Below are positions 11,692 through 55,920 of a stretch of 64,000 nt of DNA, one piece after another. Position 1 is the first letter of the stretch, and each line of letters starts with the position of its first letter. Where the stretch lies: positions 225,015-289,014 of the IMG/VR virus record IMGVR_UViG_3300046167_000825, one strand, 5' to 3'. Both the position numbers and the translations under genes were made by a program. The notes under the pieces are model-generated. The model saw only the letters and a program-made list of their open reading frames with translations. It had not been told where the DNA came from and made no database searches.

Positions 11692-12296
11692 ATATGTGGT
11701 GGAGTGGACATAAAATACTAGAGCCTCACGAGTTGGAGAATCGCTTTTCTACTGAGGATTGTATCTTCAATAATGGGATTACCTTCACAGAGGTGATGTC
11801 TGAGGAGATGAAAGCACAAGTTGATAAGATTAAATCGTTTTTGGATATGATTCCTAGACGGGAAGCCGATTTTGTTGAGTTGTACTACTTCCAACACATG
11901 AAGCAAACGGATATCGCAAACTTGTTTTGTGTGACCCAACCGACTGTCTGTTATCGTCTTCAAAGGGCTTCTGCTCGGATTAAGTTCCTTGTAGAACTCC
12001 CCGATTTAACCATAGCACAGATTCAGAATGACCTTGAAGAAGTCTTGGTTGACCCTCTCGATGTGAAGATCATGGTGCAAATGTATCAAACGACATGTCA
12101 ATCAGAAGTGGCGAAGAATCTCAATGTTTCTCAAGGGCTAGTTCGACATAGATTTATTAGGTCTATCAAACGATTGGGTTGTGACGGCTACGATGAACTG
12201 GTTGCCGTTTATAAAAAAATCTCCGAAAACTTGAACATCCTCAGAGAAGTGCAACGACCCTCTCTTTCCGAAACTTCTTTCATTGTCTTACACTAA
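11688..12296 (+). CDS. sigma-70 region 4-like protein with two HTH motifs
   Basis: LYYFQHMKQTDIANLFCVTQPTVCYRL and QSEVAKNLNVSQGLVRHR. Confidence 0.7.
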   Translation: MNMWWSGHKILEPHELENRFSTEDCIFNNGITFTEVMSEEMKAQVDKIKSFLDMIPRREADFVELYYFQHMKQTDIANLFCVTQPTVCYRLQRASARIKFLVELPDLTIAQIQNDLEEVLVDPLDVKIMVQMYQTTCQSEVAKNLNVSQGLVRHRFIRSIKRLGCDGYDELVAVYKKISENLNILREVQRPSLSETSFIVLH

Positions 12297-12306
12297 TCCG
12301 TTTATA
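12294..12306 (+). promoter_or_regulatory. putative late promoter (first of 19 copies counted)
   Basis: TAATCCGTTTATA; matches consensus TAWY-N3-YYKATA found at intergenic sites. Confidence 0.6.
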
Positions 12307-12333
12307 GACGGACACATTTATTGAGGGACACAA

Positions 12334-12645
12334 ATGTCAGACAAGAAAGAACATCGTATTTTAATGACCAAGCGACTGGCTAGGCGGTGGGTGTTATCCC
12401 ATATTCGTCCAGAGAGCCGTATTACGGTTTATTATGGTGCAACGGATGTTAGCCGTATCCCTTCTCTTTTGCGTAGTTTCCGAGATGGGAAAGTGAAATT
12501 GACGGGTGTTGATATCAAGATTCCCGATTTGGGTGTTCAAGAACGCTTTGATGCCTTTGAGGTTTGGTCTTCCGATAAAGAGTCTATGATTGTTCTTAAT
12601 AAATGGCTTGAAGATCGTGGATTTCAGACATCGGGAGTTTGGTAA
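12334..12645 (+). CDS. hypothetical late protein with tag-like RLARRWV
   Basis: ORF with RBS after the late motif. Confidence 0.65.
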   Translation: MSDKKEHRILMTKRLARRWVLSHIRPESRITVYYGATDVSRIPSLLRSFRDGKVKLTGVDIKIPDLGVQERFDAFEVWSSDKESMIVLNKWLEDRGFQTSGVW

Positions 12646-13076
12646 TGTCATCACAAAGAATTGAGAGTGCCTTCAAATATAAGTATGTGACGGTAACGGC
12701 AGACACTTATTATTACGAAATTGTGGCAGACACCCAACTTAATATCTCAGTTCGAGATATCGTAGCCCCCAACGGTCAGTTGATAGACTCCATGACACTT
12801 CTCCCAGCAGAAGTTGTTTCTGATATAGCCGCAAGTATTCTTGTGGTGAAAGATTTATTAGGTCTTGCTACTCGTCTTACGGGTGAGGCAGATTTCGTTT
12901 CGGCTACCTCCGTTACGGTGGAGTTCGCAGAAGCCCAGAACTCCACAGATTATTCTGTTCTTCTTGACCCTTCTGTTTTCTTAGATTTTCGTGTCACAGC
13001 GAAAACTACGGTGAGTTTCACTATTGAATCCTCGACAACATATACGGGTTCAGTTCGCTGGTCTTTATTTGTGTAG
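12645..13076 (+). CDS. virion protein with C-terminal beta-sandwich (fibre-tip-like) domain
   Basis: SVTVEF...DYSVLL...VTAKTTVSFTI resembles the C-terminus of the next gene. Confidence 0.5.
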   Translation: MSSQRIESAFKYKYVTVTADTYYYEIVADTQLNISVRDIVAPNGQLIDSMTLLPAEVVSDIAASILVVKDLLGLATRLTGEADFVSATSVTVEFAEAQNSTDYSVLLDPSVFLDFRVTAKTTVSFTIESSTTYTGSVRWSLFV

Positions 13077-14282: not shown

Positions 14283-14329
14283 TCGTGGTAATATGCCTAT
14301 ATTTTCAACAAAGATAATAGAGGTGTCTT

Positions 14330-19009: not shown

Positions 19010-19750
19010 ATGAGTTCTGGAATACCTAAACCAAATGTCAACAAACAAGAGATTCTTGAAGCCTTACCTTTGGAGATCAGCCGAATTGCGGTGACGACCA
19101 AAGAAGGGGAAGTCAAGTATCGGAAAGTCGAAGAAGTCGAACTAGAAGACATCTTGATGTTCAACAAGAGCAATCAACCCGTTGTGATGAGAGGCAAGGC
19201 TGGGAGACCCTCCGATCTCCCCACATTGGATTTGCCCTCTCTCCAAGACACAAGCAACTTTGTCCCTCTGCCAAATCGTCTGCAAAAACGAAAAGACTTG
19301 GCTGTTGCACAAACACCTCAGCCAACGGCTCTGAACTATCAAAATGATAGGGTTCTCGCACAAGTGAGTCAAGACCCCGAATCCTTAGATGTCCTCCATT
19401 CCGTGATGATGGGCTTGGCAGAAGAAGCAGCCGCTATGGCTCAAGCGAGAGTTTCACTTGAAGCACAAGGGAAGAACACCTCCAATGTGTCATCAAAGCG
19501 TGTATCGGCATTGCGAGCCATTGGTGATACATGGATGAAGCGAAAGGAACAGTTGGGGGGTAAGGGAATCGACTTGGAGGGTTTGGCTTTCAAGAGAGTT
19601 TTCGGATTCACAATGGAAACTTTTCGTAAAGCACTCACTCAATCCAACATTCGTCCAGAACAGATTGAGGTTATCTTCGCAAAACTAGCGAACTTGATGG
19701 GTGATGATTGGGTAACTGAAGCGAAGAAAAGAGCAGATGGGGATGACTAA
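19010..19750 (+). CDS. putative terminase small subunit
   Basis: Helical protein immediately upstream of and coupled to the large terminase; positional inference only. Confidence 0.4.
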   Translation: MSSGIPKPNVNKQEILEALPLEISRIAVTTKEGEVKYRKVEEVELEDILMFNKSNQPVVMRGKAGRPSDLPTLDLPSLQDTSNFVPLPNRLQKRKDLAVAQTPQPTALNYQNDRVLAQVSQDPESLDVLHSVMMGLAEEAAAMAQARVSLEAQGKNTSNVSSKRVSALRAIGDTWMKRKEQLGGKGIDLEGLAFKRVFGFTMETFRKALTQSNIRPEQIEVIFAKLANLMGDDWVTEAKKRADGDD

Positions 19751-21588
19751 TGTCTGGATTTCTTTCCGACATCGTGATGGGTGCTGGTCGTGTAAAAGGG
19801 ACTGAAAGTCGCTCCGTTGTTGACATCATCACTTTCATCGAAAGTGCATGGGGTTTGCAAATGCGATTATTCCCCGTTCAGAAAATCATACTGAAAGCAC
19901 ATTACGGTATCCCCCTAGATGACACAGAAAAGACAGTCCCTTATTCCGATTGGAGAAGGGAGAATGTCCAGATGCTGACAGAAGCCGAATACCTCCGATT
20001 ATTGCATAAAGAGGGTCGGTGTAATATCTCTGAGGTGACGGAAGGACACGAAAGACGAGAGATGATTTTATCTGTGGGGAGACGGAGTGGGAAGACAACA
20101 ATATCTGCTTGTATCGCTGCCTATGAAACATACAAGTTGATTTCCAAAGGTGACCCACAAGGGTTCTATGGTTTGCCTAGTTCCAACGTTATTCAGTTAA
20201 TAAGTGTTGCGACAGACAAAGACCAAGCGGGATTACTCTACAACGAGGTGAGTGGTCACTTTCGCAATTGCTCTTTCTTCACTCCCTACTCTGCTAACAA
20301 CACCATGTCCTATGCGAGATTTCAAACCCCTATGGACATTGAAAGATATGGCTCTTATTCAGAGGACAACAGTGCCAACGCCAATATCAAAGTGACCTTC
20401 CGTTCTTGTGTTGCGAAGGGGCTTCGTGGGGCTGGTAATATCTGTGTTATCCTTGATGAGGTCGCTCACTTTACAGACAAGGGACAAAGTGGTGCAGAAG
20501 CCGTATATAACGCTGTGACACCTTCTACCTCAGCCTATTCACAGAAAGACCCCAACAATAAATCAAAGCCCATAGGTGAGGTTGAGGGGCGTATTATATC
20601 CATCTCCTCTCCATTGGGGAAACAAGGGTTGTTCTACAAATTGTTTAATACAGCATTTCGTGGTGGAGCAGCCAGTGCTAATATGTTGGCTGTTCAAGCA
20701 CCCACTTGGGAAGTGAATCCCACTGTTCCAGCCACCGAGTTCGCTAAACATTATGTTAAAGACCCTCGTGTGTTTTTCACGGAATATGGGGCTGTGTTCT
20801 CTGACCGAACAAGAGGTTGGATAGAGGATTCCAAAGACCTCTTGGCGTGCGTGGATGACTCCCGAAAAGAAGTTAAAAAAGGCAAAACACGAGTTCCCTA
20901 TTTCATGGGAATCGACTTGGCTCTTGTTGGTGATGGCACGGCTGTGGCTATTGGGCATCTCGAAGAGATTGATGGGGAGAATAAGATAATCCTCGATCTC
21001 ATAGCCCATATTAAGGCTGGAGAAGGGGATTATGCTGATAGGGAACGCTTGGAGTTCGATGATGTGGCTGATTGGATACTCGGTTGGACAAAGAAGTTCT
21101 ATGTGAAAGAAGGTATCTTCGATCAATGGGCTGGGATTCCTTTTGAGCAAGCCCTCGCCAAAAGAGGTTTGAAGAATATCAAGTCTACACACTTCACCAA
21201 GAATCTCACATCACAGATATTTCAGAACTTCAAAGATTTGATGTTCGACAAGAAAATGATTCTCTATAATGACCCAGTACCCAAAGACGGTGAACTGTGT
21301 CCCTACTTAGAGGAAATTATGGAACTCCAAGCCGAGATCCATAGCAAGCACATCATCACGGTGGCTGCCCCTCAAGTCGAAGGAAAGCATGACGATATGT
21401 CGGATGCTTTAGTTCGGATGGTTTGGTCGGCTTCCCAGAATATCACAAAGCAACTGCGTGTTTCTATGGCGAATGGTCGTAATGCCTTCGGTCATCAAAC
21501 CACCACAAGTGACCTAGTTCGTAGGCGAACTAGAGCCTTACAAAAGGGGTCACACCCATCCCGTCAATCACGCAAATGGCGAAAATAG
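19750..21588 (+). CDS. terminase large subunit
   Basis: GRRSGKT Walker A, VILDE Walker B, ISS coupling motif, RNase H-like GIDLA and HDDMSDA. Confidence 0.93.
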   Translation: MSGFLSDIVMGAGRVKGTESRSVVDIITFIESAWGLQMRLFPVQKIILKAHYGIPLDDTEKTVPYSDWRRENVQMLTEAEYLRLLHKEGRCNISEVTEGHERREMILSVGRRSGKTTISACIAAYETYKLISKGDPQGFYGLPSSNVIQLISVATDKDQAGLLYNEVSGHFRNCSFFTPYSANNTMSYARFQTPMDIERYGSYSEDNSANANIKVTFRSCVAKGLRGAGNICVILDEVAHFTDKGQSGAEAVYNAVTPSTSAYSQKDPNNKSKPIGEVEGRIISISSPLGKQGLFYKLFNTAFRGGAASANMLAVQAPTWEVNPTVPATEFAKHYVKDPRVFFTEYGAVFSDRTRGWIEDSKDLLACVDDSRKEVKKGKTRVPYFMGIDLALVGDGTAVAIGHLEEIDGENKIILDLIAHIKAGEGDYADRERLEFDDVADWILGWTKKFYVKEGIFDQWAGIPFEQALAKRGLKNIKSTHFTKNLTSQIFQNFKDLMFDKKMILYNDPVPKDGELCPYLEEIMELQAEIHSKHIITVAAPQVEGKHDDMSDALVRMVWSASQNITKQLRVSMANGRNAFGHQTTTSDLVRRRTRALQKGSHPSRQSRKWRK

Positions 21589-21870: not shown

Positions 21871-22170
21871 ATGGGAAGATACAGAGCAAGAAACACAGAC
21901 CCCGTTGAAAGGGATGTTCATAAGAACATAGCCGAAGCCGAGCGTTATCTGAAAAGAGCGTTGTCGGTTCTTTCTTCTGTTCGTGGGAATCCCTCTATAC
22001 GGAAAGCACGGTATAATCAACTAGAGCAAATGCTCCAAGAATCCGTGAAGGTTTTATCTTCTCCTCCTCGATTGACACATGCTCATGATAAAAACGACCC
22101 CGACTTGAATCCAAAGGTCGCAGAGGAACAACGGAAAAAACGAATGGAACGGAAAAGAGGTGATAAATGA
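21871..22170 (+). CDS. basic hypothetical protein
   Basis: ATGA overlap with portal. Confidence 0.6.
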   Translation: MGRYRARNTDPVERDVHKNIAEAERYLKRALSVLSSVRGNPSIRKARYNQLEQMLQESVKVLSSPPRLTHAHDKNDPDLNPKVAEEQRKKRMERKRGDK

Positions 22171-23849
22171 CAAAAAAATCTGGTGTGGCAGTCGGTAAAG
22201 TTCCTTCTCGTGCGAAAGTACACACGGGAAAACCTCGTAAAGTTGTGGCTAGTTCAATGAAAGTTGGTGGGTTACAGACCTATTCTGGTGGCGAAGGGTC
22301 TGGTGGGAACTTCTATTCTCCCGAACTGAGTACCGATTTCCTTGAACTCCCACAGAGTATGCACGAGAGATGGAATTACTTCCGTTTCTTCTATCGTTCA
22401 GAACCTTTCGTGGGTCAAGCGATTGATCTTCACACCGAACTTCCCCTTTCAAAAATCCGTCTGGGTTTCCCGAACTACATCAAAGACAGAGAGATGGCGA
22501 AGGAGGCATTGGACTTCTGTCAGAAGTGGTCTAGGAAAATCGGATTACTTCACCGTTTGATTGAGATCGTCCATGAATACAATCTCATTGGTGAAGTGTT
22601 TATCTTCATGGAAGATGTGACTTCAGACCCACCCGATGATCTTAAATATGAAGTCAGACGAGAACTGCTTGATGATGGGACAGTCCAAGAGGAACTTGTA
22701 GAACGAGAGGATGCCAAAGAACTGCAAGTGAAATGGTTGAAAAAGAACTACAAGGGTTGGACAGCCCTCCGAGTTCTCCCCCCAGAGCAAACCCATGTTC
22801 AATCGTTTCCATTCACGGATGAGAAGATTATTGAACTTATCCCCGATTCTAAAACAAAGGACATTATCTCACAAGCAGATAGTGGTGACCCAACAGCAAA
22901 GCGTATTGTGGACTCCATGCCTAGAGGTGTGGTGGAAGCCGTCCTTGAAGGGAAGAATATCCCCTTGAACACCGATCCAGATGCGGGTTCTTTCGTCTGC
23001 TATCTCGCTCGTAAGAAATCACAGTATGAGGACAGAGGGCATTCCATCCTTGAGAGATGTATCCGAACTCTCGTGTTCCGAGATAAACTTCGTCAAGCCA
23101 ACACTTCTATCGCTTCAAGGCACATGACCCCCATCCGTTTGGTCTATGGTGAAGATATGGATCAAGCCGATGTGGAAGCATTGAGAGAGCAAGTGGATTT
23201 GGCTCTTGCTGATCCCGACTTCTCTATCATAGCGAACTTTGAAATCCGATGGGAGGAAATGGGTTCTGACCAACGCCTCCTTGATCTTGGTTCTGAATAT
23301 GACCTCACTGATCGTCAGTTGTATGCTGGTCTTGGTGTGACAGAAGGCTTACTCTCTGGTGAGAGTTCTTATAGTGGTGACCGTATCAACTTGGAAGTCA
23401 TCAACACGAGGTACATGCTTCTCCGAGAAATCCTACAAGACTTGGTTGAGGAGAAAATGCTCAAACCAATGTGTGCTAGGATGGGTTTCATTGAGGAAGA
23501 TGAATACGGAAATGAACATGTGGTTTATCCCACACTTTCTTTCACAAGACTTGCACTCAGAGATAACAATGACACTTTCGATGCCTTGTTCAATCTCTAT
23601 CAGAAGGGTTCATTGGATGTGGATATCATCTTGGAACTCTTGAACATTGACCCAGTAGCAACCAAAGAGAAACTAGAACGAGATATGTTCACACTCAACG
23701 ATAGTCAGTTCAATGAGGTTCTACGAGGTATCTATGGTGAGGCTGGTCGTGCATTAGCCGAGAACTCAGATGCCCTTGAAAAGATAGCCGAGAATCTAGG
23801 TCTGACCTACGAGAAGCCCGAAGAAGAAGGTGGCGGTGGTAGATTCTGA
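22167..23849 (+). CDS. portal protein
   Basis: 560 aa after terminase; EPFVGQAID, GEVFI, RGHSILE, AGLGV motifs typical of portals. Confidence 0.85.
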   Translation: MTKKSGVAVGKVPSRAKVHTGKPRKVVASSMKVGGLQTYSGGEGSGGNFYSPELSTDFLELPQSMHERWNYFRFFYRSEPFVGQAIDLHTELPLSKIRLGFPNYIKDREMAKEALDFCQKWSRKIGLLHRLIEIVHEYNLIGEVFIFMEDVTSDPPDDLKYEVRRELLDDGTVQEELVEREDAKELQVKWLKKNYKGWTALRVLPPEQTHVQSFPFTDEKIIELIPDSKTKDIISQADSGDPTAKRIVDSMPRGVVEAVLEGKNIPLNTDPDAGSFVCYLARKKSQYEDRGHSILERCIRTLVFRDKLRQANTSIASRHMTPIRLVYGEDMDQADVEALREQVDLALADPDFSIIANFEIRWEEMGSDQRLLDLGSEYDLTDRQLYAGLGVTEGLLSGESSYSGDRINLEVINTRYMLLREILQDLVEEKMLKPMCARMGFIEEDEYGNEHVVYPTLSFTRLALRDNNDTFDALFNLYQKGSLDVDIILELLNIDPVATKEKLERDMFTLNDSQFNEVLRGIYGEAGRALAENSDALEKIAENLGLTYEKPEEEGGGGRF

Positions 23850-23907
23850 TAATCTATCTATATCGTCTTATAGATGAATAAGAGAGAAGTCGTCAAAAAC
23901 TTCAACT

Positions 23908-23940
23908 AAAAAAGAAAGGGGAGTCCCTCAACTCCCCTTT
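23908..23940 (-). terminator. intrinsic terminator for the minus-strand island
   Basis: AAAGGGGAGT/ACTCCCCTTT stem with upstream A run. Confidence 0.65.
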
Positions 23941-23964
23941 CAACCACAAACTTGGCTTAATGTA

Positions 23965-24611: not shown

Positions 24612-24682
24612 AGCAATCTCCTTGTGCTTTATATACGGAGAAACCTTTTCGATGCGATCCCTTTACGGCATTATTTTATAAA

Positions 24683-25069
24683 TTAGTTCTCTCGGTTTTC
24701 TAGTTCCATCTCAAAGAGTTCAACGGCTTCTGTCAAGCCATGCTTTTTCAATAGTTCGATGGCGTACTCATCACACATATCTTCATTGAGAGAACGGAAG
24801 TGTATATGCCCTAGTTCGTGTGCTAAGATAATAAAGAGGTGGTCAGCCGAGAACCAGTCACTGCTAAATAATCTCCTATCAAGTAATATCAGAGGCTGAG
24901 GTACATCTTCCCAAGCAGCAAAAGCGTGAGAGGTTTCAAACATCGACATTTCAAAGTGCCACTTGGAATCTTCGGGGAGGACGAAGGTATCAGTGGCTGG
25001 ATCTAGACATAGAACTAGCACCTTTTCGTCAAGGGGGCAGATAAACTGTTGGTATTGTGCTAAATCCAT
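24683..25069 (-). CDS. HExxH zinc metallopeptidase (ImmA/IrrE-like)
   Basis: ILAHELGHIH...E..CD..A. Confidence 0.7.
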   Translation of the reverse strand: MDLAQYQQFICPLDEKVLVLCLDPATDTFVLPEDSKWHFEMSMFETSHAFAAWEDVPQPLILLDRRLFSSDWFSADHLFIILAHELGHIHFRSLNEDMCDEYAIELLKKHGLTEAVELFEMELENREN

Positions 25070-25119
25070 AATCTCTTTATAGAACTCCTATATCAAACGC
25101 CTTATTGAAGGAAAATCGA

Positions 25120-32775: not shown

Positions 32776-32788
32776 GGAGGAGACTACT

Positions 32789-33718: not shown

Positions 33719-34243
33719 GTGTCCCCACATGGGGTAAAAAGTCATTATTTTCGGTCGCCTCCCCTAATGTTTTGAACATCACCCCAAAAATGAAAGGGGA
33801 AACAACCGAAAATGGAGAGCAAGGAAGAACTAGGGGAGGCTATACTATGTGGTATCGGGATGGTTTGAGAGGGCAAGTACCCACCGAACACTTAAAAGTG
33901 CCTCCTATGGCTGTTTTTGAGAGCCTCAGTGACCGTCCTTTGATGGGGGCTGTTCTTTATACGATTTCCGATTTGATATATAATTTTCCGACAGAGTTTC
34001 ATGACAAGATAGAGGGGCATTGGTCTTCCCACCTAACAATGAAAAGGATGAATTGTTGTCTTCTATAAACCGTAGTTCGTTGAAGGAGATTTTGATAAAA
34101 AATCTCTATTCTCTGTGGCACAAGCAAATAGCCTATTGCCCTAGTTCAAACTGGCATATTGGTTTTTCTTTGCTTTTCTGTTCCACTTTTTTTCCCGATA
34201 ACTGCTCTATATTCTCATACTTAAGGTACAAGAGAGGTGTTGA

Positions 34244-43163: not shown

Positions 43164-43251
43164 TCGATCTTCAGTCGTTCTTTTATATGACGACCCAATA
43201 TGGAGAGAGAGGGGTTTGCCCAAATCTTTTTTATTCCATACAGAGGTGTTT

Positions 43252-46072: not shown

Positions 46073-46196
46073 TCTTTCTATATTCCTTTTTAATTGCCTC
46101 CTTGTTTGATGGGGGCGAAATCTTAATCTCGTTATTCGTTCGATAAAGTACTCTTATTAACGAATACCCCTATCAAAAATATTCTAGGAGAAAAAA

Positions 46197-46680
46197 ATGG
46201 CTGAAATCTTTGTTGTAAATAAATCAGCGGGACTTAATGGAGCGTTGGTTTCTGACCTTCCCGTAACCAATTCTGCCCCCGTTGCTCGTCAAATCCAATT
46301 CTATATCGCTTCTTTGTACAGTGGTTACGAAGCAGAAATCACTGAGTATCTGACTGCTGTCGGTGCGACTGCTGTTTATGCAGACATCGCTGGTGCAGTT
46401 GCTGCTGGAACTGCTCTTGATGCTGCTTCAATTGGTAAGGAACTACGGAACTGGTTCTGTTGAAGATGTTCTTCGTATCCTTGTTGGTGCTAACAGTTCT
46501 GATGGTATGATTGAAGAATCTGCAAATCTTGGTAACCACCGAATCTTGGGTGGAACTACTCGCAGAATCTATACCCGTGACCGTGTTGATGCTTCAATTC
46601 ATGAAGGCTTCCTTCGTGCTCAATTGGATGCTGGATCAATCATTATCTATTCACTTGACGGCTCTGTCGCTCACTCATAA
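46197..46680 (+). CDS. virion protein paralog A (+1 frameshift at about 46439)
   Basis: Two ORF halves that together align end to end with the intact paralog at 46694. Confidence 0.75.
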
Positions 46681-46693
46681 TTAGGAGAATCCA

Positions 46694-47203
46694 ATGGCTG
46701 AGATTTTTGTAGTAAATAATAGTTCTGCTCTTGTAGGGCAATATGTGTCTGACCTTCCAGTTGTCAATGAGACACCCGTATCTCGCCAGATTGGGTTCTA
46801 CTTGCCAGCAGTGGCTTCATCTTATCAAGCGACTTTGAGTGCATATCTTACTGATACTGCTGCTGTTTTCGGTGCTGATGCTGCTGATGCAGACGCTGGT
46901 GCGACTGCTATCATCGGATTGATTGGTGGGGATATCACGGAAGCCACAATCAACACTGCGTTCGGTCTTGGTGGGGATGTTCTTAACGGAACAGCAAGCA
47001 TTGAAGAGATCATTCGTATCCTTGTGGGAACAGACAGTGCTTTCACTGAAACTGGTATTGTTGGGAATCACCGTTTACTCGGTGGGAAACGCAGAATATA
47101 CTTGCGTGACCGTGTTGAGGCTTCTCTTGGAGAAGGTTTCCTCCGTACATTCTCGGATGCTGGTGACTTGGTAGTGTATCTTGCAGACGGTACTGTTGTG
47201 TAA
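46694..47203 (+). CDS. virion protein paralog B
   Basis: MAEIFVVN...VSDLPV...RILVG...GNHR.LGG..RIY.RDRV.AS shared with paralog A. Confidence 0.75.
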   Translation: MAEIFVVNNSSALVGQYVSDLPVVNETPVSRQIGFYLPAVASSYQATLSAYLTDTAAVFGADAADADAGATAIIGLIGGDITEATINTAFGLGGDVLNGTASIEEIIRILVGTDSAFTETGIVGNHRLLGGKRRIYLRDRVEASLGEGFLRTFSDAGDLVVYLADGTVV

Positions 47204-47270
47204 GGTTCAATAACCATTCGATAAACAAAGGGTGTTGAGAAATCAACGCCCTTTTTTGTGGAGAAAATAC

Positions 47271-48137: not shown

Positions 48138-48719
48138 TCATTGAAGTCCTTTAATAAAATCTTTCAATGCCGTGAGGTCTCCTCCTTCGACCCCCGTCCA
48201 AAGGAAACCATGCCCCCCAGCCTTGTTCCATTCTTTTATGGTGGTGTGGTGATCATCAATCAATACGGCATTGGGCTTACAGAAAGAAACCTTCTCAGAA
48301 CGAGGAACGACATTAACAACAGCCTCCGACCCCAACACCTCACGGACATATCTCGTCTTGTCCTCCTCAGCATACATACCAATGGGAGCAGTGAGAAACT
48401 CATAATAGAAGCCACTGTTCCTCACCCAATCCCATAGCCCATTGTGTTCCATTGTTGGGAGGTCGTAGAACCACCCCTCTTGACACCCTATCTTATAGAG
48501 TAGGGGTAAGACTACTTTATGATTTAACTCGTCTTTCTGGAGGGGGTAAGCCTTTCCGAAGACCTCAATGTATTTCCGTAATCCTTTCTTGAGGCTCTTG
48601 CTTTCAAGGGCTTCCATCTCTGTGTCGGTAAGGGTCGCCAGTCGTTTAATCTCTGTGACCATAGCCAAGCCAAAGTCACAGACACAGCCATCCATATCTT
48701 GATAAATTGTGATAGACAT
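48138..48719 (-). CDS. HAD-family 5'(3')-deoxyribonucleotidase-like protein
   Basis: DMDGCVCDF, FLTAP, K, LIDD motifs; AGGAGG RBS. Confidence 0.82.
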   Translation of the reverse strand: MSITIYQDMDGCVCDFGLAMVTEIKRLATLTDTEMEALESKSLKKGLRKYIEVFGKAYPLQKDELNHKVVLPLLYKIGCQEGWFYDLPTMEHNGLWDWVRNSGFYYEFLTAPIGMYAEEDKTRYVREVLGSEAVVNVVPRSEKVSFCKPNAVLIDDHHTTIKEWNKAGGHGFLWTGVEGGDLTALKDFIKGLQ

Positions 48720-48877
48720 AAAAAATCCTCCTTTGTTTGTCCAAATCATATACGGAAAAAACTACTTCAATCAACCGTAATCTAAAACACTTTACCACCC
48801 CCATTAAAATAGGAATCTCTTCCCAATTCCCATGAATCCTTTTATATTCCTATTTCAATAGGAACAAGGAGATAGAC

Positions 48878-49318
48878 ATGGGGAACTCAAGCATTCGTGT
48901 GGCATATAGATATTTGACAGCACGAGGGAAAGCCAAGAAAGATGTTGGACACGGTGGGTTAGACGAATGGTTTTCTGGTCATGGCACTGGGAAGAACAAG
49001 AGTGAGGGTGAAGCCACTTGGGGTGATTGGGTGTCAATATCTCCCGTAGATAAAACCATAGAGAAAGAAGACGGCACAAAGAAGAAGATACAGAAAGGGG
49101 ATATCGTGGGGGACTGTGGTATCAGCAAAGACCCCGAATGGAAAGACACCACCAACAATGGCAAATCACCCTTGAAGTGTATGCCTCGTCAGAAAGCCCA
49201 CAAGATGGATAAGAAGGAAAGAGCCGAACTAGCCAAAGGGAAGCAGAAAGCAGAGAAGGGGAGCAAAGGGAAGAAACCCGTGAACACCCCCACTTTCAAG
49301 AAAGAAGATAAGAAGTAA
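48878..49318 (+). CDS. basic probable internal head protein with N-terminal RVAYRYL tag
   Basis: GGLDEWF...WVSI...CG...KCMP. Confidence 0.7.
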   Translation: MGNSSIRVAYRYLTARGKAKKDVGHGGLDEWFSGHGTGKNKSEGEATWGDWVSISPVDKTIEKEDGTKKKIQKGDIVGDCGISKDPEWKDTTNNGKSPLKCMPRQKAHKMDKKERAELAKGKQKAEKGSKGKKPVNTPTFKKEDKK

Positions 49319-49321
49319 ATA

Positions 49322-50257
49322 TTACTTCCACCCCCCACCGAGTTCTTTGTATTTCGCCAAAGCCCACCCATTGGCGTAGGCTGAAGGATACTTGTTGAAG
49401 CCTTTACCCTCATTGGGGGCATTGACGGTTTTCCCACCTTCAGTGACCGACTTCAGTTCGCCCTTCGCCATCTGAATCATTTTATCCCACAGTTTCTGAT
49501 TGGTCGCTTCTGGTTTCTTTTCTTTCGACACCAAGAATCTGTAAGCAACTCGGACAGAGGCTTGTTTAACTTTGGGAGTGGCTTCCTTTGCGACCTTCTC
49601 TCTTGTTTTCAACCACTTGACTCCTTGTTGGAGATCCGTGAAGAAAATCCTATCCTTTCGCAGTAAACCTCTCGATTTTTTTGCTCTTATCTCAACATTC
49701 TCAAACTTCCGACCCGTCCATTCCCAAAGGTATTGGTTGCTCACAACAAGTTGGCGGGTGACCCTTCCATTCTCCCACACGGGGAGGCGAATAGATATGC
49801 TCCCTCCAGTTTTCTTGGCTTTCGCTTTGGATTTCATGATGGCATCTTTGTTGGATTTCTTCCATGCTTTGTACTTGGAGTTCGCTGAAGAAGAACTAAG
49901 TGCTGGATCATGACCCCAGTTCCGTAAAGATATCTCCCATTTGGACATCCCCGTGCTACCAACGGGTTGTCCGATTTTCCCACCGAGCATTCTCCCATTG
50001 AAACCATTCTCTTGGGCTGCATTATCAAAGTCGACATCTGACCACTCTTTAACGGGCTTTGATTTCCGTCTCTTGATACGATGAAGGGAATCCAAACCAC
50101 TTTGAATACCACCCTCATCTTTCGCTTTCGCTCTATTGAGAGAAGCCTCCAAACGGGCTGGGTTCTTCGCCCACTCATCGAGAGCATCTTGACTCATATT
50201 GATAAGCCCTTTCCATTTGTCGTATATCTCTTTTTTCTCTTTGTCAGATCGTGCCAT
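49322..50257 (-). CDS. multi-domain basic protein: DUF3140-like + RVAYRFL tag + DUF5872-like
   Basis: INMS...SLRNWGHDP; C-terminal PSAYANGWALAKYKELGGGW. Confidence 0.65.
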   Translation of the reverse strand: MARSDKEKKEIYDKWKGLINMSQDALDEWAKNPARLEASLNRAKAKDEGGIQSGLDSLHRIKRRKSKPVKEWSDVDFDNAAQENGFNGRMLGGKIGQPVGSTGMSKWEISLRNWGHDPALSSSSANSKYKAWKKSNKDAIMKSKAKAKKTGGSISIRLPVWENGRVTRQLVVSNQYLWEWTGRKFENVEIRAKKSRGLLRKDRIFFTDLQQGVKWLKTREKVAKEATPKVKQASVRVAYRFLVSKEKKPEATNQKLWDKMIQMAKGELKSVTEGGKTVNAPNEGKGFNKYPSAYANGWALAKYKELGGGWK

Positions 50258-50325
50258 TTCGGTATTCTCCCTTTATCTAAAACACAGATATAGAATGGTT
50301 ATTATCCTATAAGGTGAGGGTAGAT

Positions 50326-50969: not shown

Positions 50970-51035
50970 GCCTCCCAATAATAGGTTTATATTCAGAGGG
51001 CTGTGAATACACAGTCCTTTTTTTATGGAGATTCT

Positions 51036-51614: not shown

Positions 51615-51669
51615 TCGCATCAATAAAAATCTTATATTTGAACCTCCTATGTACATAGGGGGTTTTTTT

Positions 51670-52566: not shown

Positions 52567-52734
52567 CAAGGTTAAAACTGGCTTTTCGACTAGTTCGCTC
52601 ACTCTGTAGTTCGCTACTCGGTGGGCGAGTTTTGTTTTTAGTGCATCTACTGGGTTTGTGGGTTTTTCTCCCTTTACGAACCACGAAGTTTGTGCTATTC
52701 TATTCAAGAACACCTAGAAAGGAGATTCTTGGAT

Positions 52735-53973
52735 ATGAAAGTTTGTCAGCATTGTGGTCAGTCGTTTAAGGGAAGAATAAGTCGGGAGCATAAGGTCAAG
52801 TGTGCTGGTTGGGAGAACCCACCACCGTTGATGTGCTTGTGTGGTTTTTACACAGAGAGCCAGAGGGAGGACAAAGCCCACAAGAAGACTTGCTATGTTT
52901 GGCAGACGAGGGATAAGAAAGCGATAGCCCAAGCAAGGAGGAAACAACGAGCATTGGAGGTCTATGGTACGACCTCTCCCGTGAGCAAGTCAGCCTTAGC
53001 CCAGCAAGGAGTCAAGTCTGGTCGAAAGGGTTTGGATACTAGCACGGTGATAGAACGCTTCAAGGCGAAGCACGGGGGTGCGTATGATTATTCCAATGTG
53101 GTGTATGTTAATGCTCACACGAAGGTTGAGATAACTTGTCTTGCTCATGATTATACATTCAAGCAGAGGGCGAGGGATCATTGGGATGGGAATGGTTGTT
53201 CTTTGTGTGCTAGGGAGGCTATCTCTATTAGTCGTTTGGTTTCTTTTGATGAGTGGGAGGCATCGTGTGTGGCACGGCATGGTGCTATCTATGATTATTC
53301 CAAGATTGTTTTCTGGCTTGGCACTAACGAAAAGTATGTGATTGGTTGTAAGACTTGTGGTTCAGACTTTGAGCAGAGGGCGAGTAGTCATTATCAGCAT
53401 GGTTGCCCCAAGTGTGGTCAGAAACAACGAGAGATTTCTTGCACCAAGACTCACGATCAGTTCCTTTCCGAAGCAGAGATGGCACACGGGAGTGATAAGT
53501 ATGAATATCTGTCAGAGTACAACCATTCCAAAGAAAAGGTGACCATTCGTTGTATCCCTTGTGATTATGTCTTTGAGCAAGAGGCGAGTGAGCATACTAG
53601 GGGTAGTGGTTGTCCGAACTGTTGTAAGGGGAAGTCCGAAAGATTGTTCGGTGAGTGTCTGGCTGAGTTGCTTCCCGATGTGGAGATATGGGATGCACGG
53701 AAGTACGATTGGTTGATGAACTCCAACACGGGATATCCTCTTGAACTAGATTTCTTTATCCCTTCCTTGAAGATTGCTTTCGAGGTACAAGGCAGACAAC
53801 ACTATGAAGAAATTGAAAAGTGGGGTGGTTCAGACAAACTGTCCTCCCAGCAAGATCGAGATGACATCAAGCGAACCCTTTGTGAATCGGAGGGGGTTAC
53901 CTTGTATGAGTATGACTTGCGAGAGGGTCGTGACAAATCTTCTATGGAGTCATGGCTTAAAGGAGTGCTTTGA
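52735..53973 (+). CDS. Zn-ribbon-repeat endonuclease 1 (putative homing endonuclease)
   Basis: Three HG..YDYS...C...F.Q....H..G.GC..C repeats plus C-terminal LELDFFIPSLKIAFEVQGRQHY. Confidence 0.8.
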   Translation: MKVCQHCGQSFKGRISREHKVKCAGWENPPPLMCLCGFYTESQREDKAHKKTCYVWQTRDKKAIAQARRKQRALEVYGTTSPVSKSALAQQGVKSGRKGLDTSTVIERFKAKHGGAYDYSNVVYVNAHTKVEITCLAHDYTFKQRARDHWDGNGCSLCAREAISISRLVSFDEWEASCVARHGAIYDYSKIVFWLGTNEKYVIGCKTCGSDFEQRASSHYQHGCPKCGQKQREISCTKTHDQFLSEAEMAHGSDKYEYLSEYNHSKEKVTIRCIPCDYVFEQEASEHTRGSGCPNCCKGKSERLFGECLAELLPDVEIWDARKYDWLMNSNTGYPLELDFFIPSLKIAFEVQGRQHYEEIEKWGGSDKLSSQQDRDDIKRTLCESEGVTLYEYDLREGRDKSSMESWLKGVL

Positions 53974-55469
53974 TGGTGAGGTTGACAACACAAGATATAA
54001 TAGATCAATTGGTCGCTTTGAATGGTGAGGCACACTTTGATTATTCGAGAGTGTTGTGGCGAGGGAAATCCGTGAAGGTCACTATTGGTTGTAAGGCTTG
54101 TGGTGGTTGGTTTGATATGTTGACTCGCTATCACAAGCAAGGGAAGGGTTGTCCCTCGTGTGAACTTGATACTTTTGTTCAGACCAAACTGATCCCAAAG
54201 TTCCGAGAGGTTCATGGGGATAACTACGACTATTCTGCTATGGTTTATATGGGCTTAAACACAAAGGTTTCTATAATCTGTTCAGAGCATGGGGTGTTCC
54301 ATCAAAAACCAAATAAGCACCTCAAAGGTCAAGGGTGTGTTCGATGTGCTGGGACTCACCGACACACAACAGTCGAGTTTATATCCAAAGCCCAGCAAGC
54401 ACATCAATTTCGTTATACTTATGATGTCTGCAATTATGTGTCAGCCCACAAAAAAGTCCAAATAACGTGTCCCACACACGGGGTGTTCTCACAAACTCCA
54501 AGTAAGCATCTCAGAGGTGCTGGTTGCCCCTCTTGTGCAAACAATGTGAGGCTTTCTCACGCTGTGATCTTATCTCGGATTGAGCGATGGCATCCCAATA
54601 AGTTTGAGGTATTGCCCTTTTCTTATGAGAATACCAAAAGCAAGATATCTCTTGTTTGCCGAGATTGTACTTTGGTGGCTTCAAAAACTCTCTGTGGTTG
54701 GGAGTTGGGTTGTGTTTCATGTAATAGGAAAACACAGTCAGAGGCTTATTCTAATAGGAAACTGACAGAGTTCAAGGCTTTTTGGGGTGATCTATTTGAT
54801 TACACAGACACCAAAATCCTAGATAGTTCATCCCGAATGATTGTTCGTTGTCGGAAACACGACTATGTCTTTGAACAAGATGTGAGTCTTCATTTGCTTT
54901 ACAATGGTTGTTCTCTTTGTCGGGGGGAGAAGATTTCTCTGTCTAAGATGAAAACCCGAGAGGAAGCCCTACATGAGATGTCGGAAACTCATAAGGATTC
55001 TTATGATTACACTCATTTTGAGTATCTTGGTGTGACCATTCCTTCTTGGATTGGTTGTAGGACTTGTGGGGGTAGATTTAAGCAAAGCCTAGATAATCAT
55101 AAGAGAGGACACGGTTGCCCCAAGTGTTCAACGGGGAAATCCGAAAGATTGTTTGGAGAGTGCCTCAAAGAACTAGGGTACAAGGCGAACAAGGTGCGAC
55201 CACAGTGGCTACGCAACCACGAAACTGGCTATCCCCTCGAACTGGACTTTTACATCCCAGAACTCAAGATTGCCTTTGAAGTGCAAGGACTCCAACATTA
55301 TGAACCCGTTGAATATTTTGGTGGTGTAGAGAACTTCAAGAAAGTGCAGAAGAGGGACAAACTCAAGAGGTTCTTATGTTACATGAGTGGGGTTATTCTC
55401 CATGAATATGATCTACGGGATGGAAAGGATAAAGAATCCATCAAGAACTATCTGAACAGCATCCTTTGA
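53973..55469 (+). CDS. Zn-ribbon-repeat endonuclease 2 (putative homing endonuclease)
   Basis: About six repeats plus LELDFYIPELKIAFEVQGLQHY. Confidence 0.8.
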   Translation: MVRLTTQDIIDQLVALNGEAHFDYSRVLWRGKSVKVTIGCKACGGWFDMLTRYHKQGKGCPSCELDTFVQTKLIPKFREVHGDNYDYSAMVYMGLNTKVSIICSEHGVFHQKPNKHLKGQGCVRCAGTHRHTTVEFISKAQQAHQFRYTYDVCNYVSAHKKVQITCPTHGVFSQTPSKHLRGAGCPSCANNVRLSHAVILSRIERWHPNKFEVLPFSYENTKSKISLVCRDCTLVASKTLCGWELGCVSCNRKTQSEAYSNRKLTEFKAFWGDLFDYTDTKILDSSSRMIVRCRKHDYVFEQDVSLHLLYNGCSLCRGEKISLSKMKTREEALHEMSETHKDSYDYTHFEYLGVTIPSWIGCRTCGGRFKQSLDNHKRGHGCPKCSTGKSERLFGECLKELGYKANKVRPQWLRNHETGYPLELDFYIPELKIAFEVQGLQHYEPVEYFGGVENFKKVQKRDKLKRFLCYMSGVILHEYDLRDGKDKESIKNYLNSIL

Positions 55470-55603
55470 ACGAACTAGAACTAGAGATACACAAACTAGA
55501 CAGTCCAAAAACAAAAAAACCACCCTGAGACTAATCTACAATTTCGGATGAAAATCTTTCTTAAAGTTCTTTCGGTATAGTCTTTCGTAACTAAGGAGGT
55601 TGT

Positions 55604-55843
55604 ATGCCAGCGAAGAAGATATCTCAAGAAGTTGTCATTGCGAGATTTAAGGCAGCCCACGCTCACGAACCCGACCGTTATGACTATTCGAGAGTGGTTT
55701 ATGATAGGGCAATTGGTAAAGTGGAAATCAAATGTAATAAGTGTGGGAACTGGTTTTTCCAAAAGGCTAGATGGCATTGGAGAGGGCATGGCTGTGCGAA
55801 GTGTAACTTAGGCACGGAGCATCTTCGGAAGCCGAAGCGATAA
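55604..55843 (+). CDS. single Zn-ribbon-repeat protein (nuclease-less relative)
   Basis: RF..AH...YDYSRVVY...C.KC...F.Q....H..GHGCAKC; AAGGAGG RBS. Confidence 0.7.
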   Translation: MPAKKISQEVVIARFKAAHAHEPDRYDYSRVVYDRAIGKVEIKCNKCGNWFFQKARWHWRGHGCAKCNLGTEHLRKPKR

Positions 55844-55920
55844 GTTCTCTATATCTTTGTGGTATTGATAACCTATCTATATCTATGTATAGTCAGACCG
55901 TATTTGAAAGGGTGGATAAT

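What the first reader, a model, noticed from the sequence alone, without database searches (positions are those of the whole stretch)
12294..55881. 13-bp putative late promoter TAWY-N3-YYKATA, 19 copies
Seen at 12294, 14289, 23850, 25069, 28089, 31995, 34199, 38197, 40082, 43783, 46070, 46133, 47211, 48834, 50289-50301 (minus strand, before the minus-strand gene ending at 50257), 50979, 51624, 55841 and 55869. Examples: TAATCATTCTATA, TAATGTTTCGATA, TAACCATTCGATA; a few copies have one mismatch. Copies are at gene boundaries and point toward the downstream gene, except 23850, which precedes only an 11-codon ORF. I did not see it upstream of replication genes, and there is no obvious -35. Inference: promoter for a phage-specific late transcription factor.
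Basis: partly seen in the sequence, partly recalled or inferred. Interest (0 to 1): 0.6.

Follow-up and report, generated by a model that had tools for sequence, protein, structure and literature searches.

The report
Late-gene promoter motif of a huge phage
A 13-base signal, TAATCnnTCTATA, sits just upstream of the structural genes of an uncultivated marine giant phage and its relatives; it is most likely the promoter that switches on late genes, a familiar kind of signal with a new sequence in an unstudied phage group.

Summary
All 19 listed copies are at the stated coordinates: 15 match the pattern exactly and 4 have one mismatch. The pattern has 19 exact hits in the window against 2.8 expected.

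The window is the last 64 kb of a 289-kb marine phage contig related to Bacillus phage G. A refined matrix, (t)(c/g)AA-TAATCttTCTATA-t, finds 36 intergenic hits genome-wide against about 0.8 expected from composition. Nearly all point at a gene start 14-70 nt downstream, and one points at a tRNA.

Relatives keep the motif at orthologous sites while the flanks diverge. There are 72 forward hits and 1 reverse hit in 889 kb of related loci.

No -35 element accompanies it. It heads the terminase/portal, protease, capsid, tail-sheath and baseplate operons and is absent from the replication module. It also precedes a few nucleotide-metabolism genes.

It is one of three promoter-like classes in this genome. 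The other two share tCCGTATA and precede early-looking and replication genes.

Best reading: a -35-less late promoter used by host RNA polymerase redirected by a phage factor. The best candidate factor is a conserved gene pair just upstream of the first copy, a NusG-like protein and a tandem sigma-region-4 protein. No transcription start data exist.

It is a new member of a known kind.

The parts
12294..12306 (+). Motif copy TAATCCGTTTATA. It overlaps the stop codon of the sigma4-like gene and lies 27 nt before the ATG at 12334. It is the first copy, at the boundary between the replication and structural modules.
   Evidence: 13.6 bits. The orthologous position in relatives also carries a motif-like site.
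14289..14301 (+). Motif copy, 28 nt before the ATG at 14330. It heads the run of genes leading to the terminase (19750-21588) and portal (22167-23849).
   Evidence: 11.9 bits
23850..23862 (+). Orphan copy just after the portal stop codon. It is followed by an 11-codon ORF and a strong hairpin at about 23914-23940, and it faces three minus-strand genes.
   Evidence: 17.6 bits; fold z = -4.1
25069..25081 (+). Motif copy before the gene of about 976 aa at 25105/25120-28050 (no family match).
   Evidence: 18.0 bits
28089..28101 (+). Motif copy before 28114/28141-28839. It heads the operon with the prohead-protease-like gene 29437-30849.
   Evidence: 20.1 bits
31995..32007 (+). Motif copy before gene 32125-32775 and the major capsid gene 32747-33658. 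It lies downstream of a terminator-like hairpin and T-run.
   Evidence: (19.2 bits). The site is conserved in an alignment of 28 orthologous intergenic regions while the flanks diverge.
34199..34211 (+). Motif copy, 32 nt before the ATG at 34244.
   Evidence: 14.9 bits
38197..38209 (+). Motif copy, 25 nt before the ATG at 38235. It lies in the loop between the two arms of a hairpin that is followed by a T-run.
   Evidence: 14.8 bits
40082..40094 (+). Motif copy before the ATG at 40138. A terminator-like hairpin at 40099-40128 starts 5 nt after the motif.
   Evidence: (15.5 bits)
43175..43187 (+). Weak candidate copy before gene 43216/43252-43785.
   Evidence: 10.7 bits
43783..43795 (+).
   Evidence: 16.2 bits
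44941..44953 (+). Weak copy, 25 nt before the ATG at 44979.
   Evidence: 10.9 bits
46070..46082 (+). The best-scoring copy, and the first of a tandem pair before gene 46197-46463.
   Evidence: 23.9 bits
46133..46145 (+). Second copy of the tandem pair. A metatranscriptome contig starts at 46151, 6 nt after the motif, but a DNA contig from another run starts at 46154, so this is not proof of a start site.
   Evidence: (15.0 bits)
47211..47223 (+). Motif copy before the ATG at 47271. A terminator-like hairpin starts 4 nt after the motif.
   Evidence: (17.0 bits)
48834..48846 (+). Copy with one mismatch (GAAT..), 31 nt before the ATG at 48878.
   Evidence: 11.4 bits
50289..50301 (-). Minus-strand copy, 31 nt before the start of minus-strand gene 49322-50257.
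   Evidence: 15.1 bits
50263..50275 (+). Weak candidate copy in the same divergent intergenic region, before 50314/50326-50628.
   Evidence: 11.4 bits
50979..50991 (+). Motif copy before 51003/51036-51614. A terminator-like hairpin at 50995-51020 starts 4 nt after the motif.
   Evidence: (14.1 bits)
51624..51636 (+). The weakest listed copy (TAAAAATCTTATA). It is followed by the terminator-like hairpin 51640-51665 and the start of the gene that ends at 52566.
   Evidence: 9.8 bits
55841..55853 (+). First of a tandem pair before the giant ORF (one mismatch).
   Evidence: 14.5 bits
55869..55881 (+). Second of the tandem pair, 39 nt before the ATG at 55921 of the ORF of more than 2,690 aa that runs off the window.
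   Evidence: (17.2 bits)
11688..12296 (+). Candidate specificity factor (inferred only): a 202-aa protein with two sigma-region-4-like HTH domains and an invariant C-terminal NLNILREVQR motif.
   Evidence: Pfam Sigma70_r4 at 4.6e-8. 939 homologues. Alignment A1 with invariant recognition helices. AF2 model and sigma-region-4 fold matches. Present in 4 of 4 related records.
11158..11691 (+). Candidate elongation/antitermination factor (inferred only): a 177-aa NusG/Spt5-like protein, always directly upstream of the sigma4-like gene.
   Evidence: Weak NusG and UpxY profile matches. All top Foldseek matches are NusG, RfaH or Spt5, best E = 1.2e-5, but the model has pLDDT of only 54. Adjacent to the sigma4-like gene in 4 of 4 relatives.

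Best explanation
The 13-bp element is the core of a phage-specific promoter class that lacks a -35 element. I call it class C.

Consensus and conservation:
- In this genome the consensus is (t)(c/g)AA-TAATCttTCTATA-t.
- Across the phage family the conserved core is TA-N5-Y-YTAT, with GG before it in G+C-rich relatives.

What it drives: mainly the structural and packaging operons, plus a tRNA, of a marine huge phage related to Bacillus phage G.

Proposed mechanism (inferred, not shown):
- Host RNA polymerase is redirected to these sites by a phage-encoded factor.
- The downstream half (YTATA) acts as the -10-like, melting-prone part.
- The upstream half (TAAT, or GGTA in relatives, about one helical turn upstream) gives the extra specificity that replaces a -35 contact.
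- Transcription starts roughly 6-11 nt after the last A of the motif.
- This class is the last step of a three-class programme. Classes A and B share tCCGTATA with two different -35-like boxes and serve early-looking and replication genes.
- The most likely specificity factor is the conserved tandem sigma-region-4 protein (11688-12296), possibly working with its constant neighbour, the NusG-like protein (11158-11691). Both are expressed from the clamp-loader operon.
- In a few sites a terminator hairpin begins 4-5 nt after the motif. Transcripts that start at the motif would lack part of the 5' arm and escape termination, while read-through from upstream would stop.
For: Shown by computation:
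- Excess over chance: 19 against 2.8 exact hits in the window; 36 against about 0.8 intergenic matrix hits genome-wide, and 4 with the reversed matrix.
- Position and orientation: 36 of 53 hits at 13 bits or more lie in the 7% of the genome that is intergenic, and nearly all point at a same-strand start 14-70 nt away. The minus-strand copy serves a minus-strand gene.
- One copy lies 20 nt before tRNA-Ala, so the signal is not tied to translation.
- Tandem copies precede two genes: 46070/46133 and 55841/55869.
- No conserved sequence lies upstream of -4. A weak A/T signal lies 10-15 nt after the motif.
- Canonical sigma-70-type promoters are not enriched in the late region: 29 found against 31 expected.
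- Conservation: 72 forward and 1 reverse hits in 889 kb of related loci oriented by the capsid gene. The motif is a conserved island in diverged orthologous intergenic regions before the capsid operon and after the sigma4-like gene. A related 227-kb record has 32 hits against 9 for the control.
- Genes served: terminase/portal, protease, major capsid, tail sheath and baseplate-like genes carry class C. The DNA polymerase and a helicase carry class B, and Erf-like and small unknown genes carry class A.
- Candidate factors: the NusG-like and tandem-sigma4 pair is present and adjacent in 4 of 4 relatives. Sigma70_r2 genes are found above cut-off in 0 of 4, and the 250-aa sigma has no close relatives in IMG/VR.

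Precedents from the literature: the phiEco32 gp36 promoter, a single AATGTA element centred at -11.5 (PMC12276001), and T4 late promoters (PMC6024815 abstract).
Against: - No start site is mapped. The one RNA run is contigs only, and the contig end at 46151 is matched by a DNA contig end at 46154.
- Three or four strong copies lie only 14-19 nt before a start codon with a good Shine-Dalgarno sequence. A start 9-11 nt after the motif would cut into that sequence.
- The motif lacks the conserved T at the position that would be -7 in a sigma-70-type -10 element.
- Some nucleotide-metabolism genes also carry the motif, so 'late' is not clean.
- The 250-aa sigma gene lies downstream of class C copies only. 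That fits neither a simple cascade nor its use as the class C sigma.
- A protein made only of region-4-like domains cannot melt DNA by the known sigma mechanism, so another partner is needed.
- The contig is about 66% complete, so a polymerase or sigma gene may lie in the missing part.
Confidence: 0.68

Rival explanations
1. The motif is an upstream activator site rather than the -10 region. The tandem-HTH sigma4-like protein would bind the 13-mer as double-stranded DNA at about -36 to -24, one HTH per half-site. A weak -10-like TAnnnn box 10-15 nt further on would be melted, and transcription would start about 22-25 nt after the motif.
For: - The two conserved halves are 8-9 bp apart, which fits two HTH domains on one face of the DNA.
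- A second weakly conserved box lies at a fixed distance: A/T signal at +10 to +15 in this genome, and GGTAGA 11-13 nt after the motif in G+C-rich relatives.
- Fold matches of the protein are to -35-binding sigma region 4.
Against: - About ten strong copies lie 14-30 nt before a start codon with a clear Shine-Dalgarno sequence, and one lies 20 nt before a tRNA. A start 22-25 nt after the motif would remove the ribosome site or fall inside the gene or tRNA.
- The second box is weak in this genome, at 0.5 bit or less per position.
Confidence: 0.12
2. The motif is an ops-like loading or pause site in the transcribed leader. There the phage NusG paralogue would join elongating RNA polymerase and make it resistant to the intrinsic terminators in the long structural operons, as RfaH does at ops.
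For: - The phage encodes a NusG/Spt5-like protein, conserved in 4 of 4 relatives.
- The motif is strand-specific and lies in leaders.
- Terminator-like hairpins follow the motif by 4-5 nt at 40082, 47211, 50979 and 51624, and terminator-like sites are enriched in the region, 33 against 17.
Against: - No separate conserved promoter lies upstream of the copies out to -70, and sigma-70-type promoters are not enriched.
- Many copies overlap the stop codon of the previous gene.
- Copies recur every 1-4 kb and occur in tandem, whereas ops-type sites occur about once per operon.
- Only about 5 of 45 sites are followed by a terminator.
- The structural model behind the NusG assignment has low confidence (pLDDT 54).
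Confidence: 0.08
3. The motif acts at the RNA level, as a processing (endonuclease) site or a binding site for a translational regulator in polycistronic late mRNA.
For: It is strand-specific, intergenic, A/U-rich and close to ribosome binding sites.
Against: - The distance to the start codon varies from 14 to more than 70 nt.
- One copy precedes a tRNA, and one is an orphan with no gene.
- There is no conserved secondary structure.
- It ends in a TATA-like sequence shared with the two other promoter-like classes.
- It marks the heads of operons after terminators.
Confidence: 0.05
4. The motif is the promoter of a phage-encoded RNA polymerase, either T7-like single-subunit or phiKZ/AR9-like multisubunit, whose gene lies in the missing third of the genome or is too diverged to detect.
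For: - The motif begins TAAT and ends CTATA, as T7-group promoters do.
- There is no -35.
- The contig is only about 66% complete.
- A giant ORF without any family match follows two copies.
Against: - No match to PF00940 or PF00623 in 289 kb. The PF00940 control search rang nowhere, so that negative is weak.
- The motif is 13 bp rather than 17-23 bp, and no conserved +1 G follows it.
- The genome encodes several sigma-type proteins and a NusG-like protein, which implies use of the host enzyme.
- Phage G-type phages are described as lacking their own polymerase (PMC7824862).
Confidence: 0.05

Closest known systems
T4 late promoters (TATAAATA; gp55 sigma, gp33 co-activator, gp45 sliding clamp)
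   Same: - A short A/T-rich element near -10 with no -35.
- Dozens of copies spaced 1-4 kb apart in front of structural genes.
- It forms the third class of an early/middle/late scheme run on the host polymerase.
- The candidate factor genes lie in the clamp-loader operon.
   Different: - The sequence differs and is longer, with two conserved halves over 13 bp.
- No gp55 or gp33 homologue was identified.
- The candidate factor is a tandem region-4-like protein paired with a NusG-like protein.
- The clamp link is unsupported; the one test run gave no verdict.
phiEco32 middle/late promoters (AATGTA centred at -11.5; phage sigma gp36 with gp79) (PMC12276001)
   Same: A single conserved element around -10, recognised with phage-encoded sigma-type proteins on the host core enzyme, with no conserved -35 consensus.
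   Different: - A different consensus.
- Here the conserved part extends about 10 bp further upstream.
- The cognate factor is unknown, and the start sites are not mapped.
T7-group single-subunit polymerase promoters (TAATACGACTCACTATAG)
   Same: They begin with TAAT, end with CTATA, form one contiguous block and have no -35.
   Different: - 13 bp instead of 17-23 bp.
- The middle positions are not conserved.
- No conserved initiating G.
- No T7-like polymerase gene was found.
RfaH/ops and other specialised NusG paralogue systems (UpxY, LoaP)
   Same: A NusG-family paralogue is encoded next to the regulated long operons; a short strand-specific DNA element lies in operon leaders; terminators are present downstream.
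   Different: - There are many copies per operon, some in tandem.
- No separate promoter lies upstream.
- The sequence is unlike ops.
- The paralogue is always paired with a sigma4-like protein.

Membership tests
-35-less promoter of the sigma-70 type, dependent on a phage factor (T4 late / phiEco32 gp36 kind) | The conserved element lies at about -10 relative to a mapped transcription start. | not testable with these tools
   No raw RNA reads were available. The metatranscriptome contig starts at 46151, 6 nt after a copy, but a DNA contig starts at 46154.
-35-less promoter of the sigma-70 type, dependent on a phage factor (T4 late / phiEco32 gp36 kind) | No conserved -35 element. | tested here: met
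   There is no information content from -70 to -5 in 45 aligned sites.
-35-less promoter of the sigma-70 type, dependent on a phage factor (T4 late / phiEco32 gp36 kind) | Intergenic, oriented with the downstream gene, and far above chance. | tested here: met
   In related loci there are 72 forward hits and 1 reverse.
-35-less promoter of the sigma-70 type, dependent on a phage factor (T4 late / phiEco32 gp36 kind) | Serves late (virion and packaging) genes and not early or replication genes. | tested here: inconclusive
   Copies head the terminase/portal, protease, capsid, sheath and baseplate-like operons and are absent from the replication module. They also precede ThyX, a thioredoxin-like gene, an exonuclease and a methyltransferase. 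There are no timing data.
-35-less promoter of the sigma-70 type, dependent on a phage factor (T4 late / phiEco32 gp36 kind) | A cognate phage-encoded sigma or co-activator. | tested here: inconclusive
   Candidates exist: two sigma-70-family genes, a tandem region-4 protein and a NusG-like protein. None is linked to the motif except by position and co-conservation.
T7-like single-subunit RNA polymerase promoter | A T7-like polymerase gene in the genome. | tested here: not met
   PF00940 has no match in 289 kb. The control rang in no genome and the contig is about 66% complete, so this negative is weak.
T7-like single-subunit RNA polymerase promoter | A contiguous 17-23-bp consensus with a conserved initiating purine directly after TATA. 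| tested here: not met
   Only 13 bp, of which about 9 are informative. Positions +1 to +9 after the motif carry no information.
phiKZ/AR9-type non-virion multisubunit polymerase promoter | Phage-encoded beta/beta'-like subunits. | tested here: not met
   PF00623 has no match although the control rang in 14 of 14 genomes. Very diverged phage subunits could escape this model.
ops-like NusG-paralogue loading site | A NusG paralogue is encoded by the element. | tested here: met
   All top Foldseek matches are NusG, RfaH or Spt5 (E 1e-5 to 1e-3). Profile matches are weak. The model's pLDDT is only 54.
ops-like NusG-paralogue loading site | The site lies in the transcribed leader, downstream of a separate promoter, about once per operon. 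| tested here: not met
   No conserved promoter lies upstream. Copies recur every 1-4 kb, some in tandem.
sigma-54 (-24 GG / -12 GC) promoter | An invariant GG and GC one helical turn apart. | tested here: not met
   Relatives have GG before TA, but this genome has AA or GA there. The downstream half is YTAT, not TGC.

The most novel reading that the evidence does not exclude
The 13-mer is read not by a conventional sigma factor but by the family-wide gene pair: a tandem sigma-region-4 protein that recognises both halves of the motif, and a NusG paralogue. Together they would form a combined initiation and antitermination module, so that late transcription in G-like huge phages starts at these sites and is terminator-proof from the first nucleotides. 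This would be a way of reprogramming host RNA polymerase without a region-2 sigma domain of the phage's own.
Probability: 0.15. Interest if true: 0.75.

Novelty: new member of a known kind. Interest (0 to 1): 0.45.

Why it matters
Phage G-like huge phages are widespread. This one was found in runs from about 20 marine and seawater studies, and its capsid gene has 545 relatives in IMG/VR. All but phage G are uncultivated, and their transcription programme is unknown. The phage G literature offers only generic software predictions of promoters (PMC12484599).

A conserved late-promoter signal, together with the two tCCGTATA classes, gives three things:
- a sequence-only way to split the many genes of unknown function in these genomes into temporal classes;
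- a way to spot virion genes;
- defined DNA targets for testing the conserved NusG-like and tandem-sigma4 pair in vitro.

The principle itself, a phage-specific promoter lacking a -35 element, is well established.

Tried and rejected
- Megablast of 20 kb of the window against GenBank phages found nothing. Relatives were reached through proteins instead.
- Bacillus phage G, the only cultivated relative (40% capsid identity, 30% G+C): its intergenic regions show no obvious copy of the motif, and the A/T richness makes matrix scans meaningless. I did not pursue it. Its gp3 'sigma factor' is not detectably similar to the 11688 protein.
- A search for a phage RNA polymerase (PF00940, PF00623) was negative.
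- RNA evidence: a single metatranscriptome run holds only two contigs, over 46151-46966. The contig ends coincide with DNA contig ends and polymorphic sites, so I rejected them as start-site evidence. No variant fell inside a motif in three DNA runs, but only about 0.6 variants were expected, so this says nothing.
- Clamp tethering, as for T4 gp33: the invariant C-terminal NLNILREVQR of the 11688 protein was tested against the putative sliding clamp (5424-6569). The result was no verdict, which is neither support nor evidence against.
- The 250-aa sigma as the cognate factor: it is disfavoured because it has no close relatives in IMG/VR, no Sigma70_r2 gene is found above cut-off in four related records, and its own gene lies behind class C copies only. 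It is not excluded.
- Terminators: the idea that the motif is generally followed by a terminator was rejected. Only 3-5 of 45 sites are, and 5-6 have a terminator upstream instead.
- One call failed on a size limit and was not repeated for 12-32 kb.

Full report
WHAT THE WINDOW IS

The window is bases 225015-289014 of a 289,014-bp linear IMG/VR virus record that CheckV rates about 66% complete.
- Its major capsid protein (32747-33658) is 86% identical to that of a 485-kb uncultured phage (LR745208), 49% to Tunturiibacter phage Tunturi_5 and 40% to Bacillus phage G. It is therefore a phage G-like huge phage.
- Near-identical DNA occurs in marine and seawater metagenomes from about 20 studies.
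- Bases 1-12296 form a replication module: DNA methyltransferases, an SbcD-like nuclease, an exonuclease, a putative processivity factor, a primase and a clamp loader.
- From 12.3 kb onward lie the terminase, portal, prohead protease-like gene, major capsid gene, many genes without family matches, a tRNA-Ala, and a giant ORF of more than 2,690 aa that runs off the end.

THE OBSERVATION

- The exact pattern has 19 hits in the window against 2.8 +/- 1.5 in shuffles. In the whole record it has 35 forward and 11 reverse hits, against 7 and 14 for the backwards-read control.
- Iterative refinement gives (t)(c/g)AA-TAATCttTCTATA-t. T0, A1, T3, T7, Y8 and T9-A10-T11-A12 carry most of the information.
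- At 13 bits or more, 36 of 53 hits lie in the 7% of the genome that is intergenic. Simulated intergenic sequence gives 0.8 +/- 1.0, and the reversed matrix gives 4.
- Hits point at a same-strand gene start, usually 25-45 nt away (range 14 to about 70). One points at tRNA-Ala, 20 nt away.
- Three exact hits inside genes (19337-, 30514-, 46844+) score 3-6 bits and look like chance. 44941, 43175 and 50263 are weak extra candidates.

INDEPENDENT SUPPORT FROM RELATIVES

- In 77 related IMG/VR loci (889 kb), oriented so that the capsid gene is on the + strand, the matrix finds 72 forward hits and 1 reverse.
- In an alignment of 28 distinct orthologous intergenic regions upstream of the gene before the capsid gene, the motif is a conserved island (..CAATAGTnnnTYTATA..) in otherwise diverged sequence.
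- Downstream of the stop codon of the 11688 homologue, most relatives again carry a motif-like site. This holds even where the protein is only 45-60% identical and the G+C content is very different. In G+C-rich lineages the site generalises to GGTA-N6-YCTAT.
- A related 227-kb record uses the variant TAGTTTnTTTATA, with 32 hits against 9 for the control. A G+C-rich 297-kb record has few exact hits, so the consensus drifts between lineages.
- Conservation across phages of such different composition, and presumably different hosts, argues that a conserved phage protein reads the motif rather than a host-specific one. This is inference.

CONTEXT: THREE PROMOTER-LIKE CLASSES

K-mer enrichment in upstream regions revealed a second, stronger signal, tCCGTATA(a/t/g). 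It comes with two alternative upstream boxes at -35-like spacing.
- Class A is TGCGGTTGCA-N14/15-CCGTATA, often followed by GTGTAAGCAATCAA. There are about 25 copies, clustered in regions of small genes. Window copies lie at 9022-9051 (+) and, degenerate, at 48749-48778 (-).
- Class B is GGGATCG-N16/17-tCCGTATA, with about 16 copies. The window copy is at 24632-24661 (-).
- Class B precedes the DNA polymerase and a helicase. Class A precedes an Erf-like protein, ATPases and small unknown genes.
- Inside the late region, the few minus-strand genes carry class A or B sites instead.
- This looks like an early/middle/late programme, but timing is inferred only. Class C also precedes ThyX, a thioredoxin-like gene, an exonuclease and a methyltransferase.
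- Canonical sigma-70-type promoters are not enriched in 32-52 kb: 29 found against 31 expected.

ANATOMY AND THE LIKELY START SITE

- No conserved base lies upstream of -4, so there is no -35.
- Downstream there is only a weak A/T signal 10-15 nt after the motif. In G+C-rich relatives this appears as GGTAGA 11-13 nt after the motif.
- Two architectures are possible. In the first, the motif is the -10-proximal element and transcription starts about 6-11 nt after it. In the second, the motif is an upstream site at about -36 to -24, and the weak second box is the -10.
- I favour the first. About ten strong copies lie only 14-30 nt before a start codon with a clear Shine-Dalgarno sequence, and one lies 20 nt before the tRNA. 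A start 22-25 nt downstream would remove the ribosome site or fall inside the gene.
- Even the first architecture is strained at three or four sites that are 14-19 nt from the ATG.
- At 40082, 47211, 50979 and 51624 (and, with a long loop, 38197) a terminator-like hairpin begins 4-5 nt after the motif, or flanks it. A start inside the 5' arm would let transcripts from this promoter escape a terminator that stops read-through from upstream. This is inference, and it applies to a minority of sites: 3-5 of 45. Another 5-6 sites have the usual order of terminator first, then motif.

WHO READS IT

- The record has no match to the catalytic domain of the beta' subunit or to T7-like polymerase. It does have two sigma-70-family genes: a 250-aa protein with regions 1.2, 2 and 4, and a 207-aa protein with an RpoH-like region 2.
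- The 207-aa sigma sits behind a class A-like site. The 250-aa sigma sits behind class C copies only.
The 11688-12296 product has two sigma-region-4-like helix-turn-helix (HTH) domains with invariant recognition helices and an invariant C-terminal NLNILREVQR (Pfam Sigma70_r4 at 4.6e-8). It has 939 homologues, and its best domain-level fold matches are ECF sigma region 4.
- The 11158-11691 product gives only weak NusG and UpxY profile matches and a low-confidence model (pLDDT 54). Even so, every top Foldseek match is NusG, RfaH or Spt5 over the full length.
- The two genes are adjacent in 4 of 4 related records. No Sigma70_r2 gene passes the cut-off in those four records, and the 250-aa sigma has no close relatives in IMG/VR.
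- The pair is therefore the best candidate for the family-wide factor. A protein made only of region-4-like domains would still need a melting partner, either host sigma or an unrecognised protein. All of this is inference from position and co-conservation, and the related records are incomplete.

RNA DATA

One marine metatranscriptome run holds contigs only over 46151-46489 and 46523-46966, the two small genes behind the tandem copies 46070/46133.
- The first contig starts 6 nt after the motif.
- A DNA contig from another run starts at 46154, and the other contig ends sit at polymorphic sites. These are therefore assembly breaks as likely as transcript ends.

COMPARISON WITH KNOWN SYSTEMS

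- The closest in logic are the T4 late promoters and the phiEco32 gp36 promoters, which have a single AATGTA element at -11.5 (PMC12276001).
- The TAAT...CTATA outline recalls T7-group promoters. However, the length, the unconserved middle, the missing +1 G and the missing polymerase gene speak against membership.
- The ops/RfaH analogy is kept as a rival because of the NusG-like gene. The copy number, the tandem copies and the lack of any upstream promoter argue against it.
- A comparative survey describes phage G-type jumbo phages as lacking both their own polymerase and sigma factors (PMC7824862). The recent phage G multi-omics paper reports only software-predicted promoters (PMC12484599). 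I found no description of this motif in the searchable library.

VERDICT

The motif is real, highly non-random and conserved across a large family of uncultivated huge phages. It is most likely a late-gene promoter lacking a -35 element. It is a new consensus within a well-known kind of signal. The cognate factor and the start site remain open.

Noticed in passing
window 9022-9051 (+) and 48749-48778 (-); G000 about 9.5-12 kb, 143-165 kb and 185-206 kb: A second promoter-like class (A): TGCGGTTGCA-N14/15-CCGTATA, often followed by GTGTAAGCAATCAA. There are about 25 copies before small or early-looking genes.
   Followed up: partly
window 24632-24661 (-); G000 70936, 79211, 81178, 93671, 99782, 107561-, 143615-, 150999-, 157417-, 192546, 205779-, 219993: A third promoter-like class (B): GGGATCG-N16/17-tCCGTATA. 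It has the same -10-like box as class A but a different upstream box, and it precedes the DNA polymerase and a helicase. The CGTATA resembles -10 elements of ECF or RpoH-type sigmas, and the 207-aa phage sigma has an RpoH-like region 2. The resemblance to those sigma classes is recalled from memory and was not tested.
   Followed up: partly
window 32083-32099: A hairpin, CCCTTGTAAACAGGGAG, about 20 nt before the ribosome site of the gene that precedes the major capsid gene. It is almost invariant (C.TG.AAACAG.GAG) in 28 diverged relatives while the rest of the leader varies. It may be a conserved 5'-UTR regulatory or stabilising element of the capsid operon.
   Followed up: partly
window 11158-12296; G001 162248-163295, G002 271217-272351, G003 48250-49394, G004 71720-72839: A conserved adjacent gene pair: a NusG/Spt5-like protein followed by a tandem sigma-region-4 protein, at the head of the structural region. 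The sigma4-like protein has 939 homologues with invariant HTH recognition helices and an invariant C-terminal NLNILREVQR.
   Followed up: partly
window 23850-23965: An orphan motif copy after the portal gene. It is followed by an 11-codon ORF and a very stable hairpin with an A-run before it and a short T-run after (fold z = -4.1). This looks like a two-way terminator between convergent genes. If the copy fires, it would make a short RNA of about 70-80 nt, or RNA antisense to the three minus-strand genes.
   Followed up: partly
window 55885-64000: A giant ORF of more than 2,690 aa that runs off the contig end. It has no Pfam match and is preceded by two motif copies.
   Followed up: no
window 46694-47203, especially 46850-46893: A small gene that is one of only two covered by metatranscriptome contigs. 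It contains a GCT/GCTG-rich stretch where contigs from three DNA runs break or diverge (loose ends, and a 3-base insertion in one run). This looks like a strain-variable, low-complexity segment in a highly expressed late protein.
   Followed up: no
window 52690-55469: Two adjacent paralogous genes for HNH or homing-endonuclease-like proteins (427 and 499 aa), just before the giant ORF.
   Followed up: no
window 206-1123, 2171-3013 and 41946-43163; G000 168483-169139: At least four DNA methyltransferase genes in this part of the genome. One of them, at G000 168483, lies behind a strong class C copy.
   Followed up: no
G000 191237-191989 and 155283-155906: Two sigma-70-family genes of 250 and 207 aa. 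The 250-aa gene lies in an operon headed only by class C copies (G000 188946, 189996) and has no close relatives in IMG/VR. It seems to be a lineage-specific addition rather than a core gene.
   Followed up: partly
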